64,000 nt of DNA, taken from Macrostomum lignano (taxonomy: Eukaryota). A program made the position numbers and the translations under genes. Position 1 is the first letter of the stretch, and each line of letters opens with the position of its first letter. The notes under the pieces are model-generated. The model made no database searches and was not told the origin of the DNA. It saw nothing but the letters and a program-made list of their open reading frames with translations. This document shows, piece after piece, positions 1 to 64,000 of the stretch. The stretch lies in contig NIVC01000020.1 of assembly GCA_002269645.1 (NCBI GenBank), positions 992,001 to 1,056,000 on the forward strand. The letters run 5' to 3'.

Positions 1-3000
1 GCGGCCATGCCGTGGGCTCCCTCCAGGCCGGACAGCAGGCCGGGGCCCGGCAGGGCGTGCGCGGTGACCAGGTCCGCCCAGTCAGCTATGCGGAACTGGC
101 CGCCGGTGGCCTGCAGCCGGGTCACGTGACCGATGTCGGCCAGCTTCCGGTCCTCCATAATCAGGAAGTTGTGCCGCTTGGCCAGGTCCCGCAGTCTGGA
201 GACGAAGTCCGGACTGAAGTCATCAAGGATGTCGCAGTGCACCTTCAGGACGCAGATGTGCGGGCCCACCTGGCGGGTTGGTGGCAGAGTTGACTAATGG
301 GTGATTAAGCTGCCGAGGCCAATTGGACTAATGGTAAGACTCCTGAATTCAATTAGACTAATAGGTGAGACTCCTGAATCCAATTAGACTAATAGGTAAG
401 ACTCATGAATCCAATTAGACTAATAGGTGAGACTCCTGAATCCAATTAGACTAATAGGTGAGACTCTTGAATCCAATTAGACTAATAGATGAGACTCCTG
501 AATCCAATTAGACTAATAGGTGAGACTCCTGAATCCAATTAGACTAATAGGTGAGACTCCTGAATCCAATTAGACTAATAGGTGAGACTCCTAAATCTAA
601 TTAGACTAATAGGTGAGACTCCTGAATCCAAGTAGACTAATAGATGAGACTCCTGAATCCAATTAGACTAATAGGCGAGACTCCTGAATCCAATTAGACT
701 AATAGGTGAGACTCCTGAATCCAATTAGACTAATAGGTGAGACTCCTAAATCTAATTAGACTAATAGGTGAGACTCCTAAATCTAATTAGACTAATAGGT
801 GAGACTCCTGAATCCAATTAGACTAATAGGTGAGACTCCTGAATCCAATTAGACTAATAGGTGAGACTCCTAAATCTAATTAGACTAATAGGTGAGACTC
901 CTGAATCCAATTAGACTAATAGGTGAGACTCCTGAATCCAAGTAGACTAATAGATGAGACTCCTGAATCCAATTAGACTAATATACGATGGTTTAGCAAC
1001 ACGAAAGCAAACTCTTTGAATTTAAAACATTGTTAATCCGCAGGCGCCACCGCATTAAACTGGGCAGGCTGCAATGCAGAACTGACTCTCAGAGCCCCCA
1101 GCTCAAGCCGCCCACCCCGCCTCCCCAGCTCAAGCCGCCCACCCCGCCTCCCCAGCCAGGTATTTTATTGCATCAAAGTTTGTCTGGTTGGCAATTCAGC
1201 GATTGGAATTTTTCCGATAGATAAAAATTTTGCCCGCAACGGTGGCCGCTCAGGTCTAATTGGGCTGCCACACCTGTCTCCCCGCCTGAGTCAGCTGCCA
1301 GGCCTGCATTTCTGGGGGGGGGGGTCCATAATGGAGAATAAATTCCAAAAATGATAAAGCCTACTGGACATTGTGAAGGTAATAAAAACCATCTGCCCAA
1401 CTTTTTAAAGCCGATCAATAGCTATGCCATCCTAAGGCTGGGTAATAAATCATGATTTTTGCTCAATTAAACGCTGCTTTGCTGGGACTCAAAATAGTAA
1501 ATTAGCTCACTCAGGCCAATCAGCTATTGAATAGCTCTTGGTCTTCCGTTTGATCATTAGCCTTAGGGTTATTGGGCCAGACATTAGCCCGGTCAATGAG
1601 TCAGTCAGCCATTAGCCCAGGTCAATGAGTCAGTCAGCCATTAGCCCAGGTCAATGAGTCAGTCAGCCATTAGCCCAGGTCAATGAGTCAGTCAGCCATT
1701 AGCCCAGGTCAATGAGTCGTCAGCCATTAGCCCAGGTCATTGAGTCAGTCAGCCATTAGCCCAGGTCATTGAGTCAGTCAGCCATTAGCCCAGGTCAATG
1801 AGTCAGTCAGCCATTAGCCCAGGTCAATGAGTCGTCAGCCATTAGCCTAGGTCATTGAGTCAGTCAGCCATTAGCCCAGGTCATTGAGTCAGTCAGCCAT
1901 TAGCCCAGGTCAATGAGTCGTCAGCCATTAGCCCAGGTCATTGAGTCAGTCAGCCATTAGCCCAGGTCATTGAGTCAGTCAGCCATTAGCCCAGGTCATT
2001 GAGTCAGTCAGCCATTAGCCCAGGTCATTGAGTCAGTCACCCATTAGCCCGCAAATTACCTGCTCGGCCAGCGCCAGGACGTCCCTGCCGAGGGTCCGGT
2101 CTGCGGCCACGCACAGGTTGGTCGCCTTCTCGGCCATGAGGCCAAGCAACCGGCGGGCCTGCGGCTGGGTGGCCACCTCGGCGCGCTGTTCGAACGGCAT
2201 CCGGCAGCGGGCGCTGAGCCGCAACAAGCTGGGAGCTTCGGCCGCGTCGCCGGTGGCATCTCGGTCGTTGTCGTTGGTCTGGATGGTGACCTGCGGGTAG
2301 CAAGGGGAATGACAGGGTCTGTTAAGCTGACTGGGTCAGAGTTAACTTGGGTCAGATATAGTTGGGTCAAGCCTAGTTGAGTCAGAGTTAGCTTGGGTCA
2401 GAGTTAGTTTGGGTCAGATCTAGTTGGGTCAGTTAGTTGGGGTCAGACCTAGGTGGGTCAGTTAGTTTGGGTCAGACCTAGTTGGGTCAGAGTTAGTTTG
2501 GGTCAGATCTAGTTGGGTCAGATCTAGTTGGGTCAGTTAGCTTGGGTCAGACCTAGGTGGGTCAGTTAGTTTGAGTCAGATCTAGTTGGGTCAGAGCTAG
2601 TTTGGGTCAGATCTAGTTGGGTCAGAGTTAGTTTGGGCCAGGGCAATTCAGATTAATTCAGAGCAAAAGAAATTTGAGTCAGGCAGTCGATGCGAGTCAT
2701 AGAGGATAAACTTGGTTAAGCATAGCCTCAGCGAAGGTGCACCTGATTCTCAAGCACGAAGGTGCGCACGGTGACGCAGAAGCTGGCCGACACCGACTTG
2801 CTGGTCTCGAGCTGGCGCAGCAGCTGGGTGAGGCGCAGCACGCAGCGCAGCGGCAGGCCGGCCCTGCGCAGGTTCTCTGCGGCGCCCTGCTCGCGGTCAA
2901 GGAGGACGCCGACTCCGGCCACCCGGAGGCCCTCACGGCGGAGAATCTCTGCCGTCTCAAGGACGCTGGACCCGCTGGTGACCACGTCCTCAATGATGAG

Positions 3001-3345
3001 GCAGGACTGGCCGCGGTCGAATTTGCCCTCCAGAATTTTCTTGGTCCCGTAGTCCTTGGTCTCCTTGCGCCGCATCAGCATGGGGATGCCGCGGTCCACG
3101 GAGATGCAGGTGGCGATGGGCAAGGCGGTGTACGGCACCCCACAGACGTAGTCGAACTTCAGGTCCGAGCAGGCCGCGAAGATCAGCTGGCTGATGGTGC
3201 GCATGAGCTCCGGGTGCGAGACGATGACGCGCAGGTCGAAGTACACCGGCGAGATCAGGCCGCTCTTCAGCTTGAACTCGCCGAACTTCACTGCTTCGAT
3301 GTCATGGAGCTTGCTGACCACGTCCGACAGGCTGTCAGAGGCCAT
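1..3345 (-). CDS. UMPS: Uridine monophosphate synthase (OPRTase + OMP decarboxylase), 3' end off-window; exons 3345-2743, 2290-2060, 269-<1
   Basis: Exon 1 has OPRTase motifs (FGEFKLKSGLISPVYFDLR, CGVPYTALP, IIEDVVTSGSS). Exon 2 has MAEKATNLCVAAD. Exon 3 has ODC motifs (VGPHICVLKVHCD, FLIMEDRKLADIG). Both introns are GT-AG, phase 0, and join in frame. Confidence 0.96.
336..983. repeat. Intronic minisatellite, 31-bp unit, about 21 copies (UMPS intron 2)
   Basis: Unit GACTCCTGAATCCAATTAGACTAATAGGTGA. Confidence 0.95.
1587..2045. repeat. Intronic minisatellite, 29-bp unit, about 16 copies
   Basis: Unit CCCAGGTCAATGAGTCAGTCAGCCATTAG, ending near the exon 2 donor. Confidence 0.95.
2330..2640. 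repeat. Degenerate short-unit repeat (TTGGGTCAGA core), UMPS intron 1
   Basis: Recurrent TTGGGTCAG followed by variable ATCTAG/TTAG. Confidence 0.85.
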
Positions 3346-3382
3346 GGCGGGCTGCGGGGTGGGGGAGGCCAGGATGCACTGC

Positions 3383-3500
3383 CTGCAGTTCACTCTGTGG
3401 CTAAGCTGGGCACTGTCGGCAGTTCACTCTGTGGCTAAGCTGGGCACTGTCGGCAGTTCACTCTGTGGCTAAACTGGGCACTGTCGGCAGTTCACTCTGT
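3383..3500. repeat. 34-bp tandem repeat, about 3.5 copies, overlapping the acceptor upstream of the UMPS ATG
   Basis: CAGTTCACTCTGT recurs at 3386, 3420, 3454 and 3488. Confidence 0.9.
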
Positions 3501-3911
3501 ACCTAAACCGCATTAGTATAAAATATAATAATAATAATATAACAGTATCTATGCGCAGCGCGAATATCCTTTAAAAAAACACTGAGCAGCGACACCACAG
3601 GATGCCGGAGCGTCACAGAATCCCTACTCCTCCAATCCCCATCTCGATTCGATTTCGCAGCAGCTCCCGGCTCCCCCCATCAATTTCACGGTGTCTGGCC
3701 GAGACGGCGGATGCAAGGAAGGACGAGAGAAAAGTTCACCTCCGGCCAAGCAGGCCGCACTTGCTGCTATCAGCGATACTGCAATCATAATTGGAGCAGA
3801 AACGGCCTACTTAGACTGCTACTGGGGGGGGGGGGCAGTACCCCTGTGCCGGCAGCATTTCGCTTATTCGGGATGGACAACCGCAGCCTGCTAAAACAAA
3901 CTGACCACACT

Positions 3912-27963: not shown

Positions 27964-28884
27964 ATGTCAGAGAAGCTCGGAGAGATTGGCAAGGTCCTTG
28001 GTGGAATTTGCGATGCCATCAAGACGATGAAGCAGCTCCAAGATAACAAGACCGAGCTGAACATAAGCACAGAAGAAGCAAAGAAGCATGCCGATGAGGT
28101 GCAGAAGCTGAGCCTGCCGGATGAACCATTGCTTGACACGATGAACCAGGAGCTGCAGAAGGTGAGGAGCTCCGGGTCCAAGCTGGAGGTCTGGCTGCAA
28201 CAATTCGGCCATCGGATCAACGAGCTGGAGCGATTCATCAAGGCGAATATCAGAGGCGGCTCCATTTCGCCAGAGGTCGTCAAAGAGTTCTGCGATCAGA
28301 TTTCCAAGACTCATAAAATGGCTGCAGATTTTTCTGACGCATTCAAAAGCTTCATCTGCTATCTGGCGGAGGCGCAGCGTCTCGCGGTGGAGCTGGCAGC
28401 TCGGTTGAAGACCAAATCGGAGGAGATGCAGCAGGAGGCGAGCACGGTGAGGAACAAGGGCGTGGCTAAAGTCACCGGCCTCGCTGCCCTGTCGGCCGGC
28501 CTGGTGGCTCTCGGCTTCTTCACCGGAGGAGTCACCTGGACCGCGGCCGGCGCTGTTGCAGGAGCAGCCGCCAGCGCGGGCGCCAGCGCCGTGGCCTACA
28601 GCACCGTCGTAAATGTGAAGGCGATGAGAGACCTGGCCAGTGGCATCAGAAACAACTTCAGCAAACTGGAAATCATCGCCAAGAACCTGAAGAGCAACTG
28701 CGACAAGGTCGAGGCCATCCAGCTGGATGAGGAGGCCATGCAGGCGCTGCAAGCTGCGCTGGAGTTCTACAGGAGAGACCTGGAGAAGGACGAGCTGCTC
28801 GAACAGAAGCAACTTGAGCTTCAGGACACCAAAGCTGAGCTGGCTGAGCTGAAGGCCAAAATGAGGAGGCTGGGTCATGACTAA
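27964..28884 (+). CDS. Intronless 306-aa all-helical protein with a Gly/Ala-rich hydrophobic hairpin (apolipoprotein-L / alpha-pore-forming-toxin-like, tentative)
   Basis: Long ORF with C/G-ending codon bias in AT-rich surroundings. Heptad-like helices flank GLAALSAGLVALGFFTGGVTWTAAGAVAGAAASAGASAVAY. The family call rests on motif resemblance only. Confidence 0.8.
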   Translation: MSEKLGEIGKVLGGICDAIKTMKQLQDNKTELNISTEEAKKHADEVQKLSLPDEPLLDTMNQELQKVRSSGSKLEVWLQQFGHRINELERFIKANIRGGSISPEVVKEFCDQISKTHKMAADFSDAFKSFICYLAEAQRLAVELAARLKTKSEEMQQEASTVRNKGVAKVTGLAALSAGLVALGFFTGGVTWTAAGAVAGAAASAGASAVAYSTVVNVKAMRDLASGIRNNFSKLEIIAKNLKSNCDKVEAIQLDEEAMQALQAALEFYRRDLEKDELLEQKQLELQDTKAELAELKAKMRRLGHD

Positions 28885-50789: not shown

Positions 50790-52200
50790 AACATGAAGTA
50801 TTATTTGAGTTGCCGATGCATTTCGTCCATTTGCATTAGGACATCGTCAGGGTCTTTTTATTGAGAAACAATTTGAACGAATATTCAGTATATATAGATA
50901 GTTGAGAGTAACAAGAGTAGTTGAATTGAGTTTTTAATTGATGGTTTAAAACTTGTACATAGTAATCAATTTTTGATACAGTATTGGTTGGGTAAAGTGC
51001 ATATCAGTTTCAAGCCAGTCCGGTCATTGACAAATCAGCTAAAAAATTCTGAGTTGACGGCTAGCCCCACCCATCGCAAGTTGGTTATTTAACGTGGGCT
51101 GTTTGGTCTTAATGTACAGGGCTTCTAATAGGCAGAGCATGTGATCTCTATTACAAAAATCAATAGCCTTTATCATTTCGTGTGGTTCAGCCTCACAACA
51201 AGAATTGCAGGTTAGTAGGTGTTCGTTAATAGCAGAGTTTTTTAGCCAGTGCTCTCTGACCCTCGTGTATAAGTGTCGTTTAGTTTTTCCTATGTAGGAG
51301 ATGCTCTGGTCCTCAGAGCAAACAAATTTATACACGACACCAGCCGCAAGAGGACGTGGAACACTGGATTTCAACTTGCAGACAAACTTAGCAATCTTTT
51401 CGGTGCGAAACACAACACGGATTTGAGTGTTTAAGTCTTTACGGAGCAGCTTTTCTAACTTCTTTTTAAACTCTATAGAACAAACACCAAAGTAAGGCAA
51501 AGTGATCAAGGGACATTCAGAGGTGGAATCACGAACTTTCATCCGATTAGGTTCAGTCAGTTTGTCATTGAGAAAAGAGTTGACAATTTTCATCACAAAG
51601 TTCTTAGGATAGCCATTGTAGCTGAGCAGATTGGTGAGGATTTCAAATTCATTGTGGAAAAGTCTCCAAGAGCTGCAAGTGGAAAAAGCCCGGTGAAGAA
51701 AGCAACGAATCAATCCGGTTTTCCATTGTCTAGGGCACAAGGCGTCAAACCTAAGCATAAGCCCGGTAAAGCTAGGTTTCCTATACATGCTGGTCGAAAT
51801 AGTTTCATCGGTGGCGTCAACGTCAATGTCTAAGAAAGGAAGTCTTCTGCCTCCCCCCTCCGCCGTGAATTTGATATTCTCATGAGTAGAATTGATTAAC
51901 TTAAAAAACTCGTCCTTCTTAGCTTCGTCCTCAAAGATCGCAAACGTGTCATCGACGTTGCGTTTGTAGAAGTGAGGCGCACAAGGGAGGACCATCCAGT
52001 CCTTCTCCCAGTGGGCCATGCATAAATTAGCGAGGGTTGGGGCGAGAGGGCTGCCCATGGCACACCCATCAATCTGTCTGTAATATTTGTCCCGAAAAAG
52101 AAAGATGCCGGAGGTGGCAAATTTGAGCATCTTCTTAAAAGTGGCTTTGGAGAAAGGAGGTGGATCGGTTTTTTCATACACAAGATCAGCAGCCAGCTCA
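50790..52200 (-). mobile_element. 5'-truncated Penelope-like retroelement (RT + GIY-YIG endonuclease) with 3' pLTR-like region
   Basis: RT motifs YRQIDGCAMGSPLAP, KRNVDDTF, LPFLDI, YRKP, followed by the GIY-YIG-type block VVYKFVC..YIGKTKRHLYTRVREH..LEALYIK...PTLN. ORF stop at 51039. Confidence 0.93.
50811..50854 (-). ncRNA. Minimal type-I hammerhead ribozyme motif in the Penelope-like 3' region
   Basis: Minus strand GACC-CTGACGA-T-GTCC-TAATGCAAAT-GGAC-GAA-ATGCAT-C-GG: core CUGANGA, 4-bp stem II, GAAA, palindromic stem III and an AUC cleavage triplet. Stem I is only 2 bp by eye. Confidence 0.68.
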
Positions 52201-54516
52201 ATGGTAAAATAAAAGAGAAAGATAAAGATAGAAAGAAAGAAAAAGATAAAAGAGAAGGGAGATAAGGGAATATATATATATATATAAGAAGAGGGGAGAA
52301 AAGAAAGAAGAAAAAGAGAGAAGAAAGGAGAGGGAAAAATGAGTAGATAGGAAAAGGCAGAGATGAGATAAAAAAGGAAGGATAAGAGAGAAAAGAGGAA
52401 AGAAGAGAAAAAAGGCAACATGATAGATGAGATAAGAAAACAAAGGAGAGAGAAGAGAAGTTTTAAAGAACTAGATAGACAGAAAAAGTCAAAAGCCAGA
52501 GTTTGCCAACATTTGCTTTAGATAGACACATTTAGAGACTCATTCTATGTGGTATCCCAGCTGATAAGATCAATGCTTGCCTAAAATTTTTATTTTAGCA
52601 CAAATTCATTATTTTTTCAAACCTTATCCTAACTTTATTAATAAGTTTTTGTTTGAGTAAGACTTCAAATTTAAGAATGTATGCTAAAATACTTCCAGGG
52701 ATTGGAATTCCACAAGTTCAAAATCTGTATGTCTTACAGCTAATTTATTATAAATTAAAGTTTGAAAAGTGACAATAAATTAATAGTCAATTGTATTGTC
52801 TTGTAGAGCACTATTGCAGCCAAGGTCTAAACTATATCAGATACCCCCTTTCCCATGCTATACTGAGCCAGACCAAATTTATTGAAAAATGCTTGTGTTT
52901 GCATTCCTACTTTTATTGTGTACCAAAATGTGTAACTCTACCATAATATTACTTAAAGCTTACTATACTTGTATATATCTACCCTATTGTAATCTAATTT
53001 ATACATAACCTTATTAGGTTTAAAACTTATATATTGCCATGCAATAATAAAATTTGCAAGAAGCTTTATATATGTTTAACATTCTTTTCATTAGCATTAA
53101 CCTATATAAGGTCCTTGGGAACAAAATATTCAAAAATTCTCATTCATTTTTTATGTATTTGTAAGTGCTAGGCTCTAAACCTAGATTTCTAGATAATAAA
53201 ATGAAATATAAAATACTAAATAATATGAAAAAACAGGATTTGTATACTTCGCTACTAAAAGTTTTACTATTAGTTTTGCATTAATATTTAGAAATATTGA
53301 TCTAATAAGTTATAATTGACAATAAAAGATAGGCCATTATATGCCTATTATGAGTGCATATTTATGCTTAGGTATTGGGGGAAAAGATTTCTGATTGCTT
53401 GTTTTAACTTGTAGCAAGTTGGGTTTTGCCTTGTATGTATCAGTGCCCAAAGCCTCCTAACAAAATCAGCAAATTCTGTATTATTCCCATGTATAATATA
53501 GAAAGAGTAACCAAGAATCCAAGATGCATTTTTATGACATTCTATCTAGCACTTGCCAATGTTGCCTGCTAACTTTCCAAGTTATTGCAAGTGGTGCACA
53601 AAACTTGTTTGCAATATTCATAGCTAGCCAAATAGTGTGAATGCTTGTAGATAAATCTGCTTTAATAGCAGAGCATCCAAATCCATGGCCAAACTAGTTA
53701 AACTTAAAAAATTAAATGTTTCAAAATGCTGGTACCACTTTTGTAAAGTGCACCATTACTTTCAATTTGTCCAATCTTTTAAGCTACATAAATTCTATAA
53801 AGCCAAGCTTCTAATAGTGTTTCAGATTGTCCCAGCTAGTGGAACTCATTTCAGCAGCATTGCAGTGATTGGAAGCATTTATTAGACTTAAAAATAGTTT
53901 TGTTTGGAGAGATATGCTCTTCTAAATGAGACATCATTTGGTTATGTCTGTTTTATATGCAAAAATTGACAAGCCTTTATAATATGCCCAAATATGCACA
54001 ATCTAAGGGTTATAAAGCAAAAGCAAAAAGTAATATGTACCTCTATATACTAAAAATCTATCTTCTAAAAATTAATAAATCTTGAAAAAAATATACTTAA
54101 AGTTACAAAAGTGTATGATTGCTTTATAAAGTACATAGGGTTGAAATAACTTGCATTAATTCCCCAATCTCTTGTTAAAAGTGTAATCATTGGTGATGAA
54201 ATTTCTTACTTTGAGAGGCTAAGATTGTAAGAGACCCGAATAGATGATTAAGCATATAGTTTTTTCTTTCAAATTTAGATTGCCTTCCTACAAAAAACTG
54301 AAGCCTTCAACTTGAGATGCAGCAATAAATTTGGAAAGAAAGGGTGTAATTTTATAGTTAATTTTCTTTTGTTTTCATTGGCCAGGAAGTTAGTCTATGA
54401 AATTTATTTGTATTCCATTGCAAGCATCATTGTAATCCATTAGGTCTGGAGTGGGTTTAAAATAATGTGTTAGTAGTTTAGTAAAGTAGTTTTTCCTTCT
54501 TGCTTTATTTCAGCCC

Positions 54517-56334
54517 ATGGCAGCGGACAATTCGACAAAAATCCCAACTCTTCTGAGCCAGGTTCTTGAGTGCATTAAGTCATCTAAGGGCGATGCCTTA
54601 GTTACAGGCTTAAAAGAAGTTAATCAGTTTTTTAGCACCGTGAATGAGTATGCCTTTAGACAGATGGGGGCTCAGATGGCCCAAGCTAGTAGTGAAGACA
54701 CCTCAGCGACAGCTGCTGAGAAGCCTGAAACCACCGCCCCTGACGCTAAGAGTCAATCACAGCAACAGTCATCTAGTGATTCGTCCTCTAAGCAGCCAGT
54801 AGCAAAGCAGGCCGAGCAAAGTTCATCCACCGCCCAGGGGACCCCAGCTTCGAAAGACGCAGCTAATGGCGTAAGCAAGTCTGGGGACTCTAGCGTTGAA
54901 GAGCTTGGTCTCCCGAAGCCCAGAGATGGTCACGTGGCTGTTTGCAGTACCTCCATCATGATAAAGCAGATACCAAAGTTTTGGAGCGAAAAGAAGGTGA
55001 AGGAGAGAGCAGAAGAATTTGGCACAGTGACCCGCATCGACTATAAGGCGTTCTTAAACACAGCAGCAGTAACATTTAAGAGCCGATCTGAAGCATTCAA
55101 GGCTATTTCTGGCGTTCCAAAAACTCGACCATTGTCAGTTTCTTGGGAACTGAATTCTGGCATTGCCAACTCTTACTTCAAAAAGTACTGGGATGCGAAC
55201 GATGGCGCCACTTTCATTCCTATCAGCATGTTCCCCTGGATGAAGCAGAAGGACTTGCTGCTTGGCGGGGCGCTGCTATTAGGCAAAGGGCAGCAACCTG
55301 CAGCTAGCAACGCAGCTAATGCTGACGCATCTAGCTCAGCAACGGCTGGCAGCAAAGCGGCCCAGTCTGGCTCTGCAGCCGCACCCAGCTCGGCTAGCAA
55401 AGCTAGTCCAGCAAACAAGAATGCCCCTGTCTCTAAGAGTGCTTCAACCACTCCTACGCAAAGGAATGTTGCTGGTAGTCCAGCCGGTAGTTTCTCCGGT
55501 AACAAGGCTTCTGGCAATGTGCAAAATTCCAAACGGAGCACTAGCTCATCTTTTGGATCGGGATCGAATCAGAAATCAGTTGGTCCGTCAGCAAGAGGCT
55601 CTGCTAGGCATGGAAATCGGTCGCAAGGAGACATTCCGAGCTTGTTTGCTAGCGACTTCACTAAACCGACTCAGCCTCAGTCAAGCACGCCTGCTCAGTC
55701 AGCTGGTCCTCGCTTTGCAACTCCCAGCAATCCTCCGCAGCAGTCCATGCCTCAAGCTGGCCAGCAGCAAAAGCATGTTCGTCCATACGGTTCGACGCCA
55801 TCCATTGGTATTGCTGGATCTGCTCAGCAGCTAAGCAACCCTTTTGCGTCACCAGCCTCAAGAGCGCCTGCTCCAGGTTTTTCAAATATTGGCCAGCAGC
55901 ATTCAACTTTTCCGCGTCAGTCACGAAACGTACCTGACGTTCAACTACAGCAGCAGCAACAGCAGAACGCTGCTTTTGGGAAAAGGAATTCCTTAGATTC
56001 GAACAGCGCCCATGGTGGCGAAATAAAACGACCGCGCATGGATGAACCCATGCAACCTGTGGGCCGCGGCTACGTTCCCGGGCGCAATGCTTCGTTTGAA
56101 TCCGGCAGCGCTGATAGGTCCGACATGAGCAGAGGTCCGGAGTACTCACAGCAGACTGGCCGCTCTGCTCCCGGGCCGCAATTTGGCCAGCCCTACGCCA
56201 ATCCAGCGCCAGCCGGCCCAGGCATCAGACCCTTTGGAACTCCTAGGCCTGTAAGCAACCAGGGCCTGCTGCAGCCTCCGGCGAATTCCAGATTTGGACA
56301 GTCGGCACCTCCACCTCGTCCTTTTCGGTTTTAA
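54517..56334 (+). CDS. Intronless 605-aa protein with a SCAF4/SCAF8-type RRM and a long S/Q/P/G low-complexity tail; no CID in the ORF
   Basis: HVAVCSTSIMIKQI...EEFG...LSVSWELNSGIANSYFKKYWDANDGATFIP resembles the SCAF4/8 RRM with its flanking extensions (SVCSTTLWVG...IAWALNKG...FWDVDLGVTYIP as recalled). Strong acceptor TTTATTTTCAG ends 3 nt before the ATG. Confidence 0.85.
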   Translation: MAADNSTKIPTLLSQVLECIKSSKGDALVTGLKEVNQFFSTVNEYAFRQMGAQMAQASSEDTSATAAEKPETTAPDAKSQSQQQSSSDSSSKQPVAKQAEQSSSTAQGTPASKDAANGVSKSGDSSVEELGLPKPRDGHVAVCSTSIMIKQIPKFWSEKKVKERAEEFGTVTRIDYKAFLNTAAVTFKSRSEAFKAISGVPKTRPLSVSWELNSGIANSYFKKYWDANDGATFIPISMFPWMKQKDLLLGGALLLGKGQQPAASNAANADASSSATAGSKAAQSGSAAAPSSASKASPANKNAPVSKSASTTPTQRNVAGSPAGSFSGNKASGNVQNSKRSTSSSFGSGSNQKSVGPSARGSARHGNRSQGDIPSLFASDFTKPTQPQSSTPAQSAGPRFATPSNPPQQSMPQAGQQQKHVRPYGSTPSIGIAGSAQQLSNPFASPASRAPAPGFSNIGQQHSTFPRQSRNVPDVQLQQQQQQNAAFGKRNSLDSNSAHGGEIKRPRMDEPMQPVGRGYVPGRNASFESGSADRSDMSRGPEYSQQTGRSAPGPQFGQPYANPAPAGPGIRPFGTPRPVSNQGLLQPPANSRFGQSAPPPRPFRF

Positions 56335-58464: not shown

Positions 58465-59150
58465 ACTCGGCAGTCCGTCATTTAGGAAAGCTGTCACTCT
58501 AATCAGCCCCTAAAGTTGTCACTCGGCAATCCGTCATTTAGGAAAGCTGTCACTCTAATCAACCCCTAAAGTTGTCACTCGGCAATCCGTCATTTAGGAA
58601 AGCTGTCACTCTAATCAGTCCCTAAAGTTTTCACTCGGCAATACGTCACTTGGGAAAGCTGTCACTCTAATCAGCCCCTAAAGTTGTCACTCGGCAATCC
58701 GTCATTTAGGAAAGCTGTCACTCTAATCAACCCCTAAAGTTGTCACTCGGCAATCCGTCATTTAGGAAAGCTGTCACTCTAATCAGTCCCTAAAGTTTTC
58801 ACTCGGCAATACGTCACTTGGGAAAGCTGTCACTCTAATCAGCCCCTAAAGTTGTCAATCGGCAATCCGTCATTTAGGAAAGCTGTCACTCTAATCAACC
58901 CCTAAAGTTTTCACTCGGCAATACGTTACTTGGGAAAGCTGTCACTCTAATCAGCCCCTAAAGTTGTCACTCGGCAATCCGTCATTTAGGAAAGGTGTCA
59001 CTCTAATCAGCCCCTAAAGTTGTCACTCGGCAGTCCGTCATTTAGGAAAGCTGTCACTCTAATCAGTCCCTAAAGTTGTCACTCGGCAATCCGTCACTTA
59101 GGAAAGCTGTCACTCTAATCAGTCCCTAAAGTTGTCACCCAGCAAGGAAG
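58465..59150. repeat. Minisatellite, 56-bp unit, about 12 copies, upstream of the cassette-array gene
   Basis: Unit GTCACTCGGCAATCCGTCATTTAGGAAAGCTGTCACTCTAATCAGCCCCTAAAGTT. Confidence 0.96.
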
Positions 59151-59647
59151 TTGTCAGCTACTAGTATGAAAGCTGTCACTCCGCAATCTGCTTCTTAAGT
59201 AGGTTGCCTTTCTGCCATCCGTCACTCACGGAAGTAACGCTAGCATGAAGAACTGCTAGCATGATGGCCATCTTATATAATCCATTGTGTTTAAGCTTTG
59301 GATCGACTCCCAAATTACATTGGCACTTATAAAGCGGAATCGAGAAGGGCGCTTCCCTCCCCTGCTTAGGGTTAAATGCACAATGCGGCCAAGTATCAAA
59401 TAGTTTCATATCTGGATATCTCAGTACCACTACCCAATTCTATGCTGTTGGTTAGACTACTATATAAATAGCTAAAGTTGTCTCATGCTTAGCTAGTATT
59501 CAGCACCTTGTGTTTAGAGACTAGCCATCTAGTGAAGGCTTGAGCATGCACAGAGTTCAGTCACCAAGGCAGCCCCTTCCAAACCCACCGCCACGTTTGC
59601 AGTGCAGCCTCGCGGCCTCCGCCATCCAACCAGCCTAAATCTCCGTC

Positions 59648-59884
59648 ATGTCAATCGCTATGGGATTTCCGCCTACCCCGGCCGGCGGCCAGGGCGGCGG
59701 CAGCTTCTCTCCGCTGACCATGTTTGAGTGCACCATCAGCAGCGCCACCATGCTCATTGACAGCATGGCAGTGCGAGACCTGCTCATGGCGTTCAAGATT
59801 GTGGCCCAGCTGCACGGCCACCTGCTGGAGGTGCTGGACCCCACTGTGCAGCGGCTGGCTACTGTGGCTGATGAGCACAGCCAG
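59648..59884 (+). CDS. Cassette-array gene, constant exon 1 (79 codons, unknown helical domain)
   Basis: ATG-initiated GC-biased ORF ending at CAG|GTAAGC, a phase-0 donor that joins the 60275 exon in frame. Confidence 0.8.
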
Positions 59885-59974
59885 GTAAGCTCAATCCAGT
59901 GCAGTATAGATCACCTGTAAACTGCGCCTTGACCACCGCCTCGGGATTGGCCCAAGATATACTGACCGTGATCC

Positions 59975-60220
59975 ACCCCTATGGAATCACCCCTGCACCA
60001 CCCTTATGGAATCGCCCCTGCACTATCCCTATGGAATCGCCCCTGCACCACCCCTATGGAATCGCCTCTGCCCCTGCACCACCCCTATGGAATCGCCTCT
60101 GCCCCTGCACCACCCCTTTGGAATCGCCTCTGCCCCTGCACCACCCCTTTGGAATCGCCTCTGCCCCTGCACCACCCCTATGGAATCGCCTCTGCCCCTG
60201 CACCACCCCTTTGGAATCGC
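59975..60220. repeat. Intronic minisatellite, 25/31-bp unit
   Basis: Unit GGAATCGCCTCTGCCCCTGCACCACCCCTAT. Confidence 0.93.
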
Positions 60221-60274
60221 CCAGGCCCAAACAGCAGGAAACCAGCCCATGGCTTCCCTCGCCATCCCTCGCAG

Positions 60275-60782
60275 TGCCCGCCGCCCGCCTCGCGATCAAC
60301 AAGCGGCTCTGGCGGCCTGGCCGGTGTGGCCGCCGCTGCTGCCGCTGCCGCTGCCGCCGGAGCTCCGGGCACGTCGAAGCTGGGCAAGCCGGAGCCGTCC
60401 TTCTCCGGTGTCAAGTCGGAGCCGGGCGCCGATTCCGACGACGACTGCGTCCTGATGGAGGCGGATCTGGTGTACGACGGCTCCGGTGCTGGCGCCGCTG
60501 CCTTCGGCCAGAGCCCGCCCGCCAAGCTGCCCCGTCTCGGCCCAGGCGGCGGTGGCGGCGGCGGCGGCGGCTCCGACCTGTCCGACTCCGGCGAGCTGTC
60601 CAACGACTGGAAGGCCACGCTGCGCAAGGCCTACCGAGTGCTGAAGGACGAGACTGGCACCAACGTGTTCGACTTCTCCCTGCCCTACTCCGCCCGCGTC
60701 AACGTCCTGGCCGCCAACCGCGTGATCGACCGAGCGCTCAGCCTCAGCCAATACCAGCCCGCGAACCTGTCCGCCTGGAGAA
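60275..60782 (+). CDS. Cassette-array gene, constant exon 2 (low-complexity linker, VKSE, acidic SIM-like motif, NLS-like motif, start of a helical domain)
   Basis: Acceptor CATCCCTCGCAG (phase 0), strong C/G third-position bias, and a GTGGGT donor in phase 1 that matches all seven downstream cassette acceptors. Confidence 0.82.
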
Positions 60783-61388
60783 GTGGGTCTTTCAAGTCAT
60801 TTCCTGTCATATTCTGTGTAGGCTACTGCTAGTAGTACGCTTATATCTGGGAGCGGCGGGTTGGCACACTGTTGGCGGTATATTGCCACCATAAAGAGAT
60901 TATCTAAATTTGGAATTAAAATCAAACTATTTGAATAATGCATACTGCAAATATTAAATGCCTTTATTATTGCACTTGTGCCCAATGATCCATTGATCAC
61001 TACATTGGCCTGAAGTGTGCCTCCCCAGCGGTCTCATTGCATATTAGCATGTGATTGTCTGTGCATTATCGAATTTAATTTCACTATAAAACAGACTACA
61101 AAAAAGGGCGTTGCAGGGCCTGATGAGTTGTGCAAATATTTAAAGTTATTGGTCCGAAATAAAAAAATGCTGCGATATTGGCTGAGCCGTGCAGCTGCCG
61201 CGCTGTGGAGCTTTAAAATATAACTATAGTAATAATAATAATCGGCCCCGTTGCAAATCGGGGGGTATCGGGGGCCGCCCCCGCTGCACCAATGCTCTCC
61301 TTGTATGACAACCTAATCAACTAATTATCATAATTTATTAATGCCTATTCAGCGTTGCCGCTTCCCAAAAACCCTCCGCTAAGCAACG

Positions 61389-61535
61389 GGGGGATTCTCG
61401 CTCAGCTGGCAGGGGAATTCTCGCTTTGCTGGCAGGGGAATTCTCGCTCAGCTGGCAGGGGAATTCTCGCTTTGCTGGCAGGGGAATTCTCGCTCAGCTG
61501 GCAGGGGAATTCTCGCTCAGCTGGCAGGGGAATTC
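61389..61535. repeat. 23-bp tandem repeat, 6 copies, just upstream of cassette X1
   Basis: CTGGCAGGGGA at 61406, 61429, 61452, 61475, 61498 and 61521. Confidence 0.93.
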
Positions 61536-61582
61536 GCACTCATCACCAGAGACTCGCAGCTGGCCATCCGGCGCTGTTTCAG

Positions 61583-61689
61583 GCGGCTGCAACCGGTACA
61601 TGTCCGTGTACTTCGGCTGCACGCTGAAGCCCGGCGTCAAGAAGCTGCACATGGCCTCGCGCTGGAAGAGGCAATTCCTTTTCAGCTTG
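61583..61689 (+). CDS. Cassette exon X1 (107 nt): GCNRYMSVYFGCTLKPGVKKLHMASRWKRQFLFSL
   Basis: TGTTTCAG acceptor (phase 1) and GTAAGA donor (phase 0). An in-frame alternative acceptor would start the exon at 61550. Confidence 0.85.
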
Positions 61690-61810
61690 GTAAGACCTGC
61701 GGCCTGCCGACCTCGTCTCCTGTCCCCTGGCAACGCCCTTTGCACCTCAGTCTAGGGTAGAAATTGTGTAGCAACCCTGCAACACTTCGGGGGGTCGGGC
61801 TGCTTTGCAG

Positions 61811-61929
61811 GGCTCTGCTACAGCTACCTGAGCACCTATTTCTCTTGGACGCTGAAGCCATCGGCCAAGAAGCTCCTTGAGCAGGCGCAGCTGCAGCAGC
61901 GGATGGATCGCTTCAAATACCTGGGCTCA
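61811..61929 (+). CDS. Cassette exon X2 (119 nt): LCYSYLSTYFSWTLKPSAKKLLEQAQLQQRMDRFKYLGS
   Basis: CTTTGCAG acceptor (phase 1), GTAAGG donor (phase 0), Y5/YF/L14-K15 register. Confidence 0.85.
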
Positions 61930-62041
61930 GTAAGGCTTAGCTTTTGGTGACCAGCACTTGCTCCCAGGCCTGGAATGCCCGCAGCGAATCCCCAGCAATT
62001 TCTGTGTCCGCTCCGCAATTCAATTGTTTTTGCACTTCCAG

Positions 62042-62148
62042 TTGTAGCCGAAAAATACTTTAAAGTGTACTTTAGCGCTGTGCTCAAACGAGATTATAAA
62101 GTGCAGCACCAGCAGCGCATCTGCGACAAAGTGTTCCACCGCGTCCTG
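62042..62148 (+). CDS. Cassette exon X3 (107 nt): VAEKYFKVYFSAVLKRDYKVQHQQRICDKVFHRVL
   Basis: TTTTGCACTTCCAG acceptor (phase 1), GTAGGT donor (phase 0), same register. Confidence 0.85.
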
Positions 62149-62255
62149 GTAGGTGTGCGCAGCTGATCAGCGCCCAGCACCTGCCCGCTACATTAGCCCG
62201 ATTGGCGAGTGTTTGAAGATGCACAATTCCATGCATATAATGTGTATTGTTGCAG

Positions 62256-62350
62256 AGCGGGCGCTGAGTTACTACTCGGGCTATTTCCGCTGCGTATTGC
62301 GGCGCGATTATAGGCAGGATTATCTAAAGAATAGCTTCCATCGAATCTGG
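62256..62350 (+). CDS. Cassette exon X4 (95 nt): RALSYYSGYFRCVLRRDYRQDYLKNSFHRIW
   Basis: TTGTTGCAG acceptor (phase 1), GTACGT donor (phase 0), same register; most similar to X3. Confidence 0.83.
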
Positions 62351-62479
62351 GTACGTGTCTGCGCCCCGTGTAGCCAAACCCTACCGTGTCTGGCTCACAA
62401 GATGCATACTCAGCAGCAGCTAACCACCCCCCCCACTCACGCTGCCACAAGGGCCAAAAGTTTTGCATTCCATCGGTGA

Positions 62480-62610
62480 TTGAGAAATGGGCGAAGGCTG
62501 CGCTTCAGGGACAGGAACGTCAAAGTCTCCAGACACGAACCCCATCGAGCATGTCTGGCACTTCGTAAAGCGAAGAGTTCAGCAGCTGGTGTCTGGCAGA
62601 ATGTGATAAT
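62480..62610 (+). mobile_element. Tc1/mariner transposase fragment between cassettes X4 and X5
   Basis: Translation SPDTNPIEHVWHFVKRRV (from about 62526) matches the Tc1/IS630 SPDLNPIE.lW..lK motif; the preceding FRDRNVKV is in a shifted frame. Confidence 0.7.
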
Positions 62611-62896
62611 AGTACATTTGATTCTAGACAGGGCAATAGGGGCTCGGAAAATTCGGCGGGTTTTGTGGATAGGAGGCGATGATGAGAGTGGGGTAAGCAG
62701 CACGGGTCTGGAATGATAGGGTTTGAGGGGCGATCGATATCAACAATGTGCATAGCATATTGAGTGAAGCGGGGCATTGGCAGACCAGGCTGTGTCCCTC
62801 CATTCTGCCGCCGGCTCTCTGCAACGTCCCAGCCAATTTTTGTTGCTCCATTGTTTGTTAGGGGGCTGACTGACCCTGAACTGCCTGTTGTTGCAG

Positions 62897-63003
62897 GAGG
62901 CTGCTCCGCCTACCTTAGCTCCTACTATCGCAGGTACCTAAAGTTTAAATATGTCAGCTCAGAGCGCAGCCAGCAGTGTCGGCACACGGTGCTCAGTCTT
63001 ATA
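62897..63003 (+). CDS. Cassette exon X5 (107 nt): GCSAYLSSYYRRYLKFKYVSSERSQQCRHTVLSLI
   Basis: CTGTTGTTGCAG acceptor (phase 1), GTAAGT donor (phase 0), same register. Confidence 0.85.
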
Positions 63004-63109
63004 GTAAGTTGCGCCTCCCCTGCCAGTTGGGGCTCGGGCGCCTGCAATGCTTCCCCTTGCACTTGGTTGAGAAAATCACTGCTAAGAAACTCCTTCCCCG
63101 CCCCTGCAG

Positions 63110-63216
63110 CCCAGTCGCTAAAGTACTTTGGCGGGCATTATCGCAAGAATCTGCAGTGCGCATTTAAGGTCAACAAGCGGCAGTCGGACACTCGAAGCAT
63201 TGTTCGGATTAGCCTG
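63110..63216 (+). CDS. Cassette exon X6 (107 nt): QSLKYFGGHYRKNLQCAFKVNKRQSDTRSIVRISL
   Basis: CCCGCCCCTGCAG acceptor (phase 1), GTCAGT donor (phase 0), same register. Confidence 0.8.
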
Positions 63217-63332
63217 GTCAGTTAGTGCGTTTCCTGATTTGTTTGTTAGAGCTGATCGGCCCAGCAACTCTCGGAAAGGGCAGCTCTCACTGCGCTTGTC
63301 TAGGCTAATTCTGTGTTAGCAATTCTTTATAG

Positions 63333-63439
63333 AGGCCGGATTCAAGTACCTTGGCAGCTGGTTTAATAAGAATCTCAAGCGGGATTTTAAACAGCAGCAG
63401 CAGCAGAGCAAGCTGAACTCAATCTTTCTTGTGCAAACT
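63333..63439 (+). CDS. Cassette exon X7 (107 nt): AGFKYLGSWFNKNLKRDFKQQQQQSKLNSIFLVQT
   Basis: TTCTTTATAG acceptor (phase 1), GTGAGT donor (phase 0), same register. Confidence 0.85.
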
Positions 63440-63538
63440 GTGAGTGCGGACTCGGCTTTGCGCTGTGTTGTGGTGATGAATAGCAGTGAGCATTCGCACT
63501 GTCTGAGCAGGGGTGAGAGCCTGATTTGTCTGGTTCAG

Positions 63539-63583
63539 TTGTGTCTGCTGCTAAAGCTATTTTCCTTGTTTGAACTGCCGAGG
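63539..63583 (+). CDS. Possible downstream constant exon (45 nt, phase 0/0): LCLLLKLFSLFELPR
   Basis: GGTTCAG acceptor in phase 0 fits all cassette donors, and a GTAAGT donor follows. No homology support. Confidence 0.35.
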
Positions 63584-63664
63584 GTAAGTCTATTGTGCGA
63601 CTCTCCCGGCTGCTCTATCCGCGTTCTGCCGAGAACTCTTGGTAACTGGCTTCTAATTTAGTAA

Positions 63665-64000
63665 ATCCCCATCCCACCAGCCCGAGAATCCCATCCCATC
63701 TACCTGAGAATCCCATCCCATCTCATCTACCTGAGAATCCCCATCCCATCACCCCGAGAATCCCATCTCACCTACCTGAGAATCCCCATCCCATCAGCCC
63801 AGGAATCCCATCTCATCTACCTGAGAATCCCATCCCATCTCACCTACCTGAGAATCCCCATCCCATCAGCCCAGGAATCCCATCTCACCTACCTAAGAGT
63901 CCCCATCCCACCAGCCCGAGAATCCCATCCCATCTACCTGAGAATCCCATCCCATCTCATCTACCTGAGAATCCCCATCCCATCACCCTGAGAATCCCAT
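63665..64000. repeat. Minisatellite, unit about 23-33 bp, running off the right edge (probably intronic)
   Basis: Recurrent CCTGAGAATCCCATCCCATCTCATCTA variants. Confidence 0.9.

What the first reader, a model, noticed from the sequence alone, without database searches (positions are those of the whole stretch)
60275..63439. Dscam-like array of seven mutually exclusive homologous cassette exons in an unrecognised gene
Seen in sequence: seven short exons (61583-61689, 61811-61929, 62042-62148, 62256-62350, 62897-63003, 63110-63216, 63333-63439), five of them exactly 107 nt and all 3n+2 long. Each has an AG acceptor in phase 1 and a GT donor in phase 0. They are separated by 106-121-nt introns except one 546-nt gap with a transposon fragment. 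Counting codons from the acceptor without gaps, codon 5 is TAC (Tyr) in all seven, codon 6 is hydrophobic, codons 9-10 are YF/YF/YF/YF/YY/HY/WF, codon 14 is Leu in all seven and codon 15 is K/K/K/R/K/Q/K. Nucleotide identity is otherwise low. The upstream constant exon ends in phase 1 (60782), so it can join any cassette, while any cassette-to-cassette join shifts the frame. Established: tandem homologous exons with incompatible phases typify mutually exclusive clusters (insect Dscam1, Mhc). Inference: one gene makes at least seven isoforms differing in one helix. Conserved protein pattern plus conserved splice phase despite DNA divergence implies old duplications kept under selection. I do not recognise this gene or array as described.
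Basis: partly seen in the sequence, partly recalled or inferred. Interest (0 to 1): 0.96.

Follow-up and report, generated by a model that had tools for sequence, protein, structure and literature searches.

The report
Flatworm gene with seven swappable exons
An uncharacterised gene of the flatworm Macrostomum lignano carries seven interchangeable copies of one short exon, apparently used one at a time under the control of an RNA base-pairing switch like the one in insect Dscam, a design not previously reported in flatworms.

Summary

**Organism and gene.** The window is Macrostomum lignano (GenBank NIVC01000020.1), not an insect. The gene, BOX15_Mlig034464g3, has exon 1 (59648-59884) and exon 2 (60275-60782, ending in phase 1). 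Seven homologous cassettes follow, each running from phase 1 to phase 0. The terminal exon starts in phase 0 just outside the window, at window coordinate 64699.

**Evidence for one cassette per mRNA.**
- The RNA-seq-based GenBank model joins exon 2 to cassette 7 to the terminal exon and skips cassettes 1-6.
- All 17 paralog clusters have exactly one such segment.
- Every two-cassette combination, and zero cassettes, gives a premature stop.
- Four paralogs carry similar arrays of 3 to 8 cassettes. In two of these genes, different models use different single cassettes.

**Candidate mechanism.** A docking site lies in the intron after exon 2 (core GGGCGTTGCAGGGC, 61106-61119). It is complementary to a selector 58-70 nt upstream of cassettes 2-7. 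The same core sits at the same place in four paralogous genes whose flanking intron sequence differs.

**Limits.** Use of cassettes 1-6, the pairing itself and the protein's function are all untested. The family has no Pfam or PDB match.

**Verdict.** This is a new member of a known kind of system.

The parts
59648..59884 (+). Coding exon 1 (ATG at 59648, 79 codons, ends in phase 0, donor GTAAGC)
   Evidence: Matches the N-terminus of GenBank model P0064. It is 84% identical at protein level to the upstream exon on contig L001.
60275..60782 (+). Constant exon 2 (phase 0 acceptor cgcag|TGCCCG; ends in phase 1, donor GTGGGT)
   Evidence: Both splice sites sit at the same positions in L001.
61103..61139 (+). 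Candidate docking site (core GGGCGTTGCAGGGC at 61106-61119), 320 nt downstream of the exon 2 donor
   Evidence: It is the strongest point of complementarity in intron 2 to the regions upstream of cassettes 2-7 (z = -7.0 against composition-matched shuffles; the next independent window has z = -2.8). The core occurs once, at the same relative place, in paralog loci L005, L007 and L011.
61389..61542 (+). Minisatellite A (23-nt unit GGGGAATTCTCGCTCAGCTGGCA, 6.7 copies), just upstream of cassette 1
   Evidence: It is complementary to the minisatellite in the last intron.
61535..61579 (+). Weak, uncertain selector-like stretch upstream of cassette 1
   Evidence: Duplex energy -30.4 kcal/mol, not distinguishable from shuffles.
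61583..61689 (+). Cassette 1 (107 nt; SGCNRYMSVYFGCTLKPGVKKLHMASRWKRQFLFSL)
61704..61742 (+). Selector for cassette 2 (core CCCTGGCAACGCCCTTT, 61725-61741)
   Evidence: Duplex energy -40.4 kcal/mol; p about 0.005; 70 nt from the acceptor.
61811..61929 (+). Cassette 2 (119 nt)
   Evidence: Its closest relative is cassette R2 of paralog locus L010.
61954..61981 (+). Selector for cassette 3
   Evidence: Duplex energy -38.9 kcal/mol; 62 nt from the acceptor.
62042..62148 (+). Cassette 3 (107 nt)
62149..62187 (+). Selector for cassette 4; it overlaps the donor of cassette 3
   Evidence: Duplex energy -44.9 kcal/mol; p about 0.005; 70 nt from the acceptor.
62256..62350 (+). Cassette 4 (95 nt)
62484..62603 (+). 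Tc1/mariner-type transposase fragment inside the 546-nt intron
   Evidence: Pfam DDE_3, E 2e-4, below the curated cut-off.
62810..62844 (+). Selector for cassette 5 (core CTCTGCAACGTCC, 62817-62829); weak by energy
   Evidence: Duplex energy -29.8 kcal/mol. The core matches 13 of 13 positions when wobble pairs are allowed, 68 nt from the acceptor.
62897..63003 (+). Cassette 5 (107 nt); the most divergent cassette
   Evidence: Only 6.7 bits in the leave-one-out test.
63009..63053 (+). Selector for cassette 6
   Evidence: Duplex energy -36.4 kcal/mol; p about 0.005; 58 nt from the acceptor.
63110..63216 (+). Cassette 6 (107 nt)
   Evidence: It is 57% identical to cassette Q3 of paralog locus L007.
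63239..63273 (+). Selector for cassette 7
   Evidence: Duplex energy -36.9 kcal/mol; p about 0.005; 61 nt from the acceptor.
63333..63439 (+). Cassette 7 (107 nt); the one used in the RNA-based GenBank model P0064
63664..64000 (+). Minisatellite B in the last intron. It runs past the window end to about coordinate 64690. The terminal exon follows at 64699-65067 (L004 11052-11420).

Best explanation
This is a cluster of seven mutually exclusive exons in a Macrostomum lignano gene (BOX15_Mlig034464g3). The gene belongs to a lineage-restricted multigene family with no known domain. Each mRNA should carry exon 1, exon 2, exactly one cassette and the terminal exon. That gives up to seven proteins of about 400-410 aa that differ only in 32-40 residues in the middle of one long alpha-helix.

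The conserved residues (Tyr5, hydrophobic 6, aromatic 9-10, Leu14) lie on one face of that helix. The variable residues would be exposed on the other face.

The inferred way a cassette is chosen is the Dscam-exon-6 type of competing RNA pairing. One docking site sits in the intron after the constant exon. [quoted passage not shown] The pairing loops out the cassettes in between and brings the chosen acceptor close to the exon 2 donor.

Frame incompatibility acts as a backstop. Two cassettes, or none, give a premature stop, so the transcript would be degraded by nonsense-mediated decay or yield a truncated product.

Shown here: the exon anatomy, the phases, the homology, the single-cassette architecture of the family, one RNA-based single-cassette model, and the complementarity and conservation of the docking core. 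Inferred: use of cassettes 1-6, the pairing in vivo, how cassettes downstream of the chosen one are skipped, and the protein's function.
For: **Anatomy and phases.**

**Homology beyond chance.** Leave-one-out HMM test.

**RNA-based model.** P0064 is 406 aa and 100% identical, over its full length, to exon 1 + exon 2 + cassette 7 + terminal exon. The NIVC01 annotation was built from RNA-seq with StringTie, TACO and TransDecoder. TACO was run with --isoform-frac 0.75, which I take to discard minor isoforms (PMC5730564).

**Family architecture.** An exhaustive HMMER search found 39 relatives, and all 19 hits whose sources carried an organism name were from M. lignano. An alignment of 17 paralog clusters shows one variable segment per protein.

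**Arrays in paralogs, with the same phase 1 to phase 0 structure and 3n+2 lengths.**
- L005: 8 cassettes
- L011: at least 6
- L007: at least 4
- L010: at least 3

Pairs of models from one gene differ only in the cassette: P0065 against P0009, P0007 against P0008, and P0070 against P0071.

**Frame backstop.** All 21 double inclusions, and zero inclusion, give premature stops. P0066 looks like a real cassette-skipped transcript of a paralog.

**Docking and selectors.**
- The best complementary hits of four of six inter-cassette introns converge on 61103-61139.
- Duplex energies are -36 to -45 kcal/mol for cassettes 2, 3, 4, 6 and 7, against shuffled-dock means of about -23 (sd 3).
- A composition-corrected scan of intron 2 peaks there (z = -7.0).
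- All six selectors lie 58-70 nt from their acceptor.
- The 14-nt core GG[GA]CGTTGCAGGGC occurs once, on the sense strand, in the intron after the constant exon in four paralogous genes whose flanking sequences differ.
- Where the L005 docking site has A instead of G, its selectors have T instead of C (4 of 5 against 0 of 6 with the window gene's C pattern reversed; Fisher p = 0.048, not independent events).

**Selection on cassettes.** Cassettes 2, 6 and 7 have cross-gene partners. Identity at codon positions 1 and 2 is 0.51-0.74, against 0.29-0.49 at position 3.

**Structure.** The cassette lies in helix 244-299 with pLDDT above 90.
Against: - No transcript or read evidence was available for cassettes 1-6 of this gene. 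Only the cassette 7 isoform and an intron-retention form (P0042) are annotated.
- Cassette 5 is weakly homologous, has a weak selector and has a transposon fragment in its upstream intron.
- Cassette 1 has no convincing selector. A minisatellite occupies the expected place.
- Raw duplex energies at the docking site are not unique. G+C-rich parts of intron 2 reach similar values, so the signal appears only after composition correction.
- Selectors share ancestry through tandem duplication. Their mutual similarity alone therefore proves nothing, and the covariation rests on one position.
- No docking core was found in locus L010 or in the more distant subfamily loci L008 and L009.
- The three genomic copies of this locus are more than 99% identical outside the minisatellite-bearing introns, so they give no test of selection.
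- No orthologous array from another species could be retrieved.
Confidence: 0.72

Rival explanations
1. Only cassette 7 is a functional exon. Cassettes 1-6 would be decaying relics of tandem duplication that the spliceosome ignores, so the gene makes one protein.
For: The only full-length RNA-based model of this gene uses cassette 7. Cassette 5 is very divergent and has a transposon fragment next to it. Cassette 1 lacks a clear selector.
Against: - All seven cassettes keep an open frame, an AG acceptor, a GT donor and a 3n+2 length despite low nucleotide identity.
- Cassettes 2 and 6, which are not the annotated one, have clear partners in other paralogs with a coding pattern of conservation.
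- RNA-based or database models of paralogs use non-terminal cassettes: the fifth and seventh of eight in L005, and the first in L010.
- The annotation pipeline was run with an isoform-fraction cut-off and removed many alternative transcripts before GenBank submission.
Confidence: 0.12
2. The cassettes are mutually exclusive, but the choice does not depend on docking-selector pairing. Splice-site strength, trans-acting factors and decay of out-of-frame products would be enough. The complementarity would then be a by-product of duplication plus one inverted copy.
For: All multi-cassette and zero-cassette products carry premature stops. The selector signal is weak for cassettes 1 and 5. No docking core is found in L010, L008 or L009, although those genes have cassettes too.
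Against: A 14-nt intronic core is identical or one base different at the same place in four paralogs whose proteins are only about 50% identical and whose flanking intron sequences differ. All selectors sit at the same distance from their acceptors. One docking-site change is matched in the selectors. As PMC6071210 points out, decay alone cannot enforce exclusivity in clusters of more than three exons.
Confidence: 0.13
3. The cassettes are ordinary constitutive exons spliced in series, as in the UniProt/WormBase models P0004 and P0043.
For: P0004 (359 aa) and P0043 (513 aa) contain pieces of cassettes 1, 2, 3, 6 and 7 in one protein.
Against: Those models need internal splice sites that differ from the homologous cassette boundaries, and they truncate cassettes to stay in frame. 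Joining cassettes at their conserved boundaries always gives a stop. No family member has more than one segment in the 17-cluster alignment. The RNA-based model has one cassette.
Confidence: 0.03

Closest known systems
Exon 6 cluster of arthropod Dscam1 (48 variable exons in Drosophila; docking site and selector sequences, Graveley 2005, as summarised in PMC6071210)
   Same: - A tandem array of homologous exons of near-equal length.
- One docking site in the intron downstream of the upstream constant exon.
- A complementary selector upstream of each variable exon.
- A docking core conserved where the rest of the intron is not.
   Different: - The protein is unrelated: no Ig or FN3 domains, and no Pfam hit at all.
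- There are seven variants rather than 48.
- Cassettes are 3n+2 long, so the frame also forbids double inclusion. The frame check is my own observation here; I did not compare Dscam exon 6 lengths.
- The organism is a flatworm, not an arthropod.
- The same docking core is shared by several paralogous genes.
- No experimental support exists.
Drosophila 14-3-3zeta, Mhc and MRP1 clusters of mutually exclusive exons with competing RNA pairings (PMC6071210, PMC4691838)
   Same: Small clusters of homologous exons whose choice is linked to competing intronic base pairings.
   Different: In those genes the docking site lies downstream of the cluster. Here it lies upstream, as in Dscam exon 6. The gene families are unrelated.
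Tandem exon duplication model for the origin of competing structures (Ivanov and Pervouchine 2018, PMC6071210)
   Same: The layout is the one that model predicts. The duplicated unit includes the exon plus the upstream intronic arm of a stem, which yields many selectors for one docking arm.
   Different: That work analysed annotated clusters in model organisms. This array and gene family are not among the cases found in the literature searched here.
Nonsense-mediated-decay-enforced pairs of mutually exclusive exons (mechanism listed in PMC6071210)
   Same: Inclusion of two cassettes shifts the frame and gives a premature stop.
   Different: That mechanism is held to be insufficient for clusters of more than three exons. 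Here including 4 or 7 cassettes would restore the frame at the terminal exon, but stops occur inside the misread cassettes.

Membership tests
Cluster of mutually exclusive exons arising by tandem exon duplication | Neighbouring exons of similar length with detectable sequence homology | tested here: met
   Lengths are 95-119 nt, five of them exactly 107. Leave-one-out HMM hits score 15.6-32.5 bits for six of seven cassettes.
Cluster of mutually exclusive exons arising by tandem exon duplication | Each variant is frame-compatible with both flanking constant exons | tested here: met
   Exon 2 ends in phase 1, each cassette runs from phase 1 to phase 0, and the terminal exon starts in phase 0.
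Cluster of mutually exclusive exons arising by tandem exon duplication | Exactly one variant per mature mRNA | tested here: inconclusive
   The RNA-based model P0064 has cassette 7 only. Paralog models carry one cassette each, and different ones. All 17 family clusters have one segment. No reads or cDNAs were available for cassettes 1-6 of this gene.
Docking site and selector control by competing RNA structures (Dscam exon 6 type) | A single docking site in a flanking intron, complementary to a selector next to each variable exon | tested here: met
   Docking site at 61103-61139. Selectors for cassettes 2, 3, 4, 6 and 7 give -36 to -45 kcal/mol (z about -3.4 to -7.9). Cassettes 5 and 1 are weak.
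Docking site and selector control by competing RNA structures (Dscam exon 6 type) | Docking site and selectors conserved while the surrounding intron diverges | tested here: met
   The core GG[GA]CGTTGCAGGGC sits at the same place in four paralogous genes. Selectors containing CCTGCA lie 54-98 nt upstream of acceptors in L005 and L007. This was tested across paralogs, not across species.
Docking site and selector control by competing RNA structures (Dscam exon 6 type) | Disrupting the pairing changes exon choice, and compensatory mutations restore it | not testable with these tools
   This needs minigenes or transgenic worms.
Dscam / immunoglobulin superfamily (protein family) | Ig and fibronectin type III domains | tested here: not met
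   No Pfam family matched at E up to 10 for the 284-aa isoform 1 N-terminal query or at E up to 1 for full-length paralogs. The model is all-helical with two short strands. The array works like Dscam exon 6 but the gene is not a Dscam.

The most novel reading that the evidence does not exclude
A multigene family restricted to Macrostomum has independently evolved exon arrays controlled by docking site and selector pairing, of the Dscam exon 6 type. Several tandemly clustered paralogs share one docking core. Each carries 3 to 8 cassettes encoding the exposed face of one helix. Together they would give a combinatorial repertoire of dozens of surface variants, perhaps used for recognition. That would be the first such system outside arthropods, in an animal where transgenesis works.
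Probability: 0.35. Interest if true: 0.85.

Novelty: new member of a known kind. Interest (0 to 1): 0.7.

Why it matters
In the literature read here, multi-exon clusters with a docking site and selectors are described in insect genes. The upstream-docking layout is described for Dscam exon 6.

An independent example in a flatworm would show that tandem exon duplication repeatedly produces this control logic. Here it occurs in an unrelated, lineage-specific gene family, with the docking core kept across paralogs.

It would also offer a very compact natural test bed. The whole array spans 3.9 kb, with seven exons and roughly 110-nt introns, in a species with working transgenesis (PMC5730564).

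There is a practical point too. Ab initio annotations of these genes are wrong: they string cassettes together. Family-wide isoform diversity in M. lignano is therefore underestimated.

Tried and rejected
**Insect origin.** I first assumed an insect source. This was wrong: an exact protein match places the window in Macrostomum lignano.

**Domain and structure searches.**
- Pfam on cassettes, isoforms and paralogs found nothing.
- A PDB sequence profile search found nothing.
- Foldseek of the AlphaFold2 model against PDB gave no match below E = 4.
- Rfam on 59000-64000 found nothing.

**Duplex folding.** Whole-intron duplex folding gave meaningless giant duplexes. I replaced it with windowed folding and local pairing alignments.

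**Motif search.** A strict search for the selector 15-mer with up to 3 mismatches mostly hit an unrelated minisatellite, because the selectors carry indels.

**Comparing the three genomic copies.** They are more than 99% identical outside the minisatellite-bearing introns, so they carry no information on selection.

**Orthologous arrays from other species.**
- Two metagenome scans returned no relatives.
- An ENA contig from another organism (L006) has a family member but no recognisable array within reach.

**Junction peptides.** The last word-index protein search, aimed at junction-spanning peptides of each isoform, did not even return the known models, so it says nothing either way.

**A possible extra exon.** A 45-nt exon-like segment at 63539-63583 is not used in any model, so I dropped it.

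**Flanking minisatellites as a family feature.** I checked whether complementary minisatellites flank the arrays of three paralogs (L005, L007, L010). They do not.

**Alignment of upstream introns.** MAFFT alignment of the introns upstream of the cassettes recovers only the TGCAnCGnCCC motif and the 3' splice site.


Full report
**Source of the window.** The window is not from an insect. The ORF at 27964-28881 is an exact NCBI protein, and its cluster mate is PAA75889.1 of the free-living flatworm Macrostomum lignano. Later look-ups place the window on NIVC01000020.1 of assembly GCA_002269645.1. Window coordinate equals L004 coordinate plus 53647.

Their lengths are 107, 119, 107, 95, 107, 107 and 107 nt, all 3n+2. 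Each follows a pyrimidine tract plus AG and is followed by GT. The introns between them are 106-121 nt, apart from one of 546 nt that holds a Tc1/mariner-type transposase fragment (DDE_3, E 2e-4, below the curated cut-off).

I tested the homology with a leave-one-out HMM against the six-frame translation of the whole window. Six of seven left-out cassettes were the best non-training hit (15.6-32.5 bits). Cassette 5 is weak at 6.7 bits. There are no other copies.

**Gene structure.**
- Exon 1 runs from the ATG at 59648 to 59884.
- Exon 2 is 60275-60782 and ends in phase 1.
- Both exons, and both exon 2 splice sites, are conserved on a 981-bp metagenome contig from a related organism, with many synonymous differences.
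- Through two near-identical genomic copies (L002, L003) and the window's own contig (L004), I found the terminal exon 699 nt beyond the window end. Its acceptor is ccccgcag|AAGCTGAAC in phase 0, followed by 122 codons.
- Exactly seven cassettes lie between exon 2 and that exon.

**What the databases hold.** An exhaustive HMMER search of 1.84 billion representatives gave only 39 relatives. All 19 hits whose sources carried an organism name were M. lignano hypothetical proteins; five others (four from ENA assemblies, one from a JGI metagenome) carried no usable name. The family has no Pfam domain, no PDB relative by sequence and none by fold.

The GenBank model P0064 (BOX15_Mlig034464g3, 406 aa) is identical to exon 1 + exon 2 + cassette 7 + terminal exon. 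The GenBank annotation was built from RNA-seq with StringTie, TACO (run with --isoform-frac 0.75, which I take to discard minor isoforms) and TransDecoder (PMC5730564). P0064 therefore reflects a real transcript that skips cassettes 1-6. The lack of other annotated isoforms is uninformative.

The UniProt/WormBase models P0004 and P0043 instead string pieces of several cassettes together through splice sites that differ from the homologous cassette boundaries. I read this as a misprediction.

**Evidence for one cassette per mRNA.**
- In an alignment of 17 paralog clusters, every protein has a single 25-37-aa segment between the conserved W and the KLxRRQK motif.
- All 21 two-cassette combinations run into a stop inside the second cassette. 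Joining exon 2 directly to the terminal exon shifts its frame.
- One RNA-based paralog model (P0066) ends in just such a shifted terminal exon, so it looks like a cassette-skipped transcript.
- Paralogous genes have arrays with the same phase 1 to phase 0 structure and 3n+2 lengths: eight cassettes in L005, at least six in L011, at least four in L007 and at least three in L010.
- Models from one gene differ only in the cassette: P0065 against P0009 in L010, P0007 against P0008 in L005, and P0070 against P0071.

**Age and selection.** Window cassettes 2, 6 and 7 are more similar to a cassette in another gene than to any neighbour in their own array (scores 87, 108 and 90 against 65, 56 and 59). 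This means at least part of the array predates the gene duplications. In those pairs, codon positions 1 and 2 are 51-74% identical while position 3 is 29-49% identical. Synonymous sites are saturated, as expected for coding sequence under long-term constraint. The three genomic copies of this locus are too similar to add anything.

**Candidate mechanism.** An unbiased search for complementarity between intron 2 and the inter-cassette introns converged on one site, 61103-61139.
- Windowed duplex folding gives -36 to -45 kcal/mol for the regions upstream of cassettes 2, 3, 4, 6 and 7. Shuffled docking sites average about -23 (sd 3). Cassettes 5 and 1 are weak.
- Raw energies are confounded by G+C content. 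After composition-matched shuffling, the site is the clear peak of intron 2 (z = -7.0; the next independent window is -2.8).
- All six selectors align to the same docking core and lie 58-70 nt upstream of their acceptor.
- The 14-nt core GG[GA]CGTTGCAGGGC occurs once, on the sense strand, in the intron just after the constant exon in four paralogous genes: window 61106, L005 5525, L007 12147 and L011 4543. Their flanking intron sequences differ.
- Selectors containing CCTGCA lie 54-98 nt upstream of acceptors in L005 and L007.
- Where the L005 docking site has A for G, its selectors have T for C. The Fisher test gives p = 0.048, but the events are not independent.

This layout, with the docking site upstream and a selector before each variant, is that of the Dscam exon 6 cluster. 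The downstream-docking layout is found in 14-3-3zeta, Mhc and MRP1 (PMC6071210). It is also what the tandem-duplication model in that paper predicts.

**What the cassette encodes.** AlphaFold2, run with the 17-sequence alignment, models residues 185-400 with high confidence. It places the cassette (residues 249-284) in the middle of one long helix (244-299, pLDDT above 90). The conserved positions 5, 6, 9, 10 and 14 fall on one helical face, so isoforms would differ in the opposite, exposed face. This last step is inference. The protein's function is unknown.

**Limits.**
- I had no reads or cDNAs, so use of cassettes 1-6 is inferred.
- Cassette 5 may be decaying.
- The pairing is untested.
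- No docking core was found in L010 or in the distant subfamily loci (L008, L009).
- It is not explained how cassettes downstream of the chosen one are skipped.
- Literature searches found no mention of these genes, and none of the listed titles or abstracts dealt with mutually exclusive exon arrays in Macrostomum.

**Verdict.** This is a real and apparently undescribed cluster of mutually exclusive exons with a Dscam-exon-6-like control layout. It lies in a new gene family and a new phylum, which makes it a new member of a known kind of system.

Noticed in passing
window 61389-61542 and 63664-64000 (continuing to about 64690): The cassette array is bracketed by two minisatellites that are complementary to each other (arms of 26-29 nt, 70-76% complementary, in many registers). 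Of 22 minisatellite units in the window, only the one in the last intron is complementary to the intron 2 unit (score 29 against 14 or less). They could form a long-range stem around the whole array. The arrangement is not seen in paralog loci L005, L007 or L010.
   Followed up: partly
L004 12927-15733 (window coordinates about 66574-69380); also L007, L008, L010, L011: Family members sit in head-to-tail tandem clusters. A 405-aa paralog starts about 1.5 kb downstream of this gene, and L007 holds three in a row.
   Followed up: partly
proteins P0004, P0043 (UniProt A0A1I8GKB1, A0A1I8I406): UniProt/WormBase models of this locus string parts of several cassettes into one protein. They carry unrelated automatic names ('Exocyst subunit Exo70 family protein', 'ULP_PROTEASE domain-containing protein'). 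Other family members carry similarly inconsistent names.
   Followed up: yes
protein P0066 / locus L011: An RNA-based GenBank model of a paralog ends ...AWRKAEPSPEKLRGNQGQPG. That is the terminal exon read out of frame after all cassettes are skipped, so a zero-cassette transcript apparently exists.
   Followed up: partly
L007 14618-15678: In the paralog encoding P0005, the intron between the last detected cassette and the terminal exon holds a roughly 40-nt-period minisatellite. Its unit contains a selector-like CTCTGCAATGAC motif, seen at least nine times.
   Followed up: no
window 63389-63418 and 63533-63562: A 30-nt inverted repeat (73% complementary, arms 114 nt apart) pairs the 3' part of cassette 7 with the intron downstream, enclosing the cassette 7 donor. 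Next to it is an exon-like 45-nt segment (63539-63583, AG...GT, open in phase 0) that no model uses.
   Followed up: no
window 62149-62187: The selector for cassette 4 starts at the donor GT of cassette 3. Other selectors begin 5-25 nt after the preceding donor. Pairing with the docking site would therefore also mask the 5' splice site of the cassette just upstream.
   Followed up: no
whole window: The window is unusually rich in minisatellites with units of 15-117 nt (69 Tandem Repeats Finder rows). Three lie in introns of this gene, and several others lie between or beside the ORFs on both strands.
   Followed up: no
window 51039-52421 (-): A 460-aa ORF with a C-terminal GIY-YIG nuclease domain sits in an A+T-rich, low-complexity stretch. 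My guess is a Penelope-like retroelement remnant, but that was not tested.
   Followed up: no
L006 (ENA ERZ25070786 ctg125606l): A contig from a different organism (G+C 40.6%) carries two family members in tandem. One contributes a terminal exon at 1977-2360 and the next an N-terminal part at 2899-3840. The family is therefore not confined to M. lignano. No array was recognisable within the 10 kb fetched.
   Followed up: partly
window 54517-56334 (+): The upstream neighbour on the same strand is a 605-aa single-exon ORF with no Pfam match. It corresponds to a separate 606-aa called gene and is not part of this gene.
   Followed up: partly
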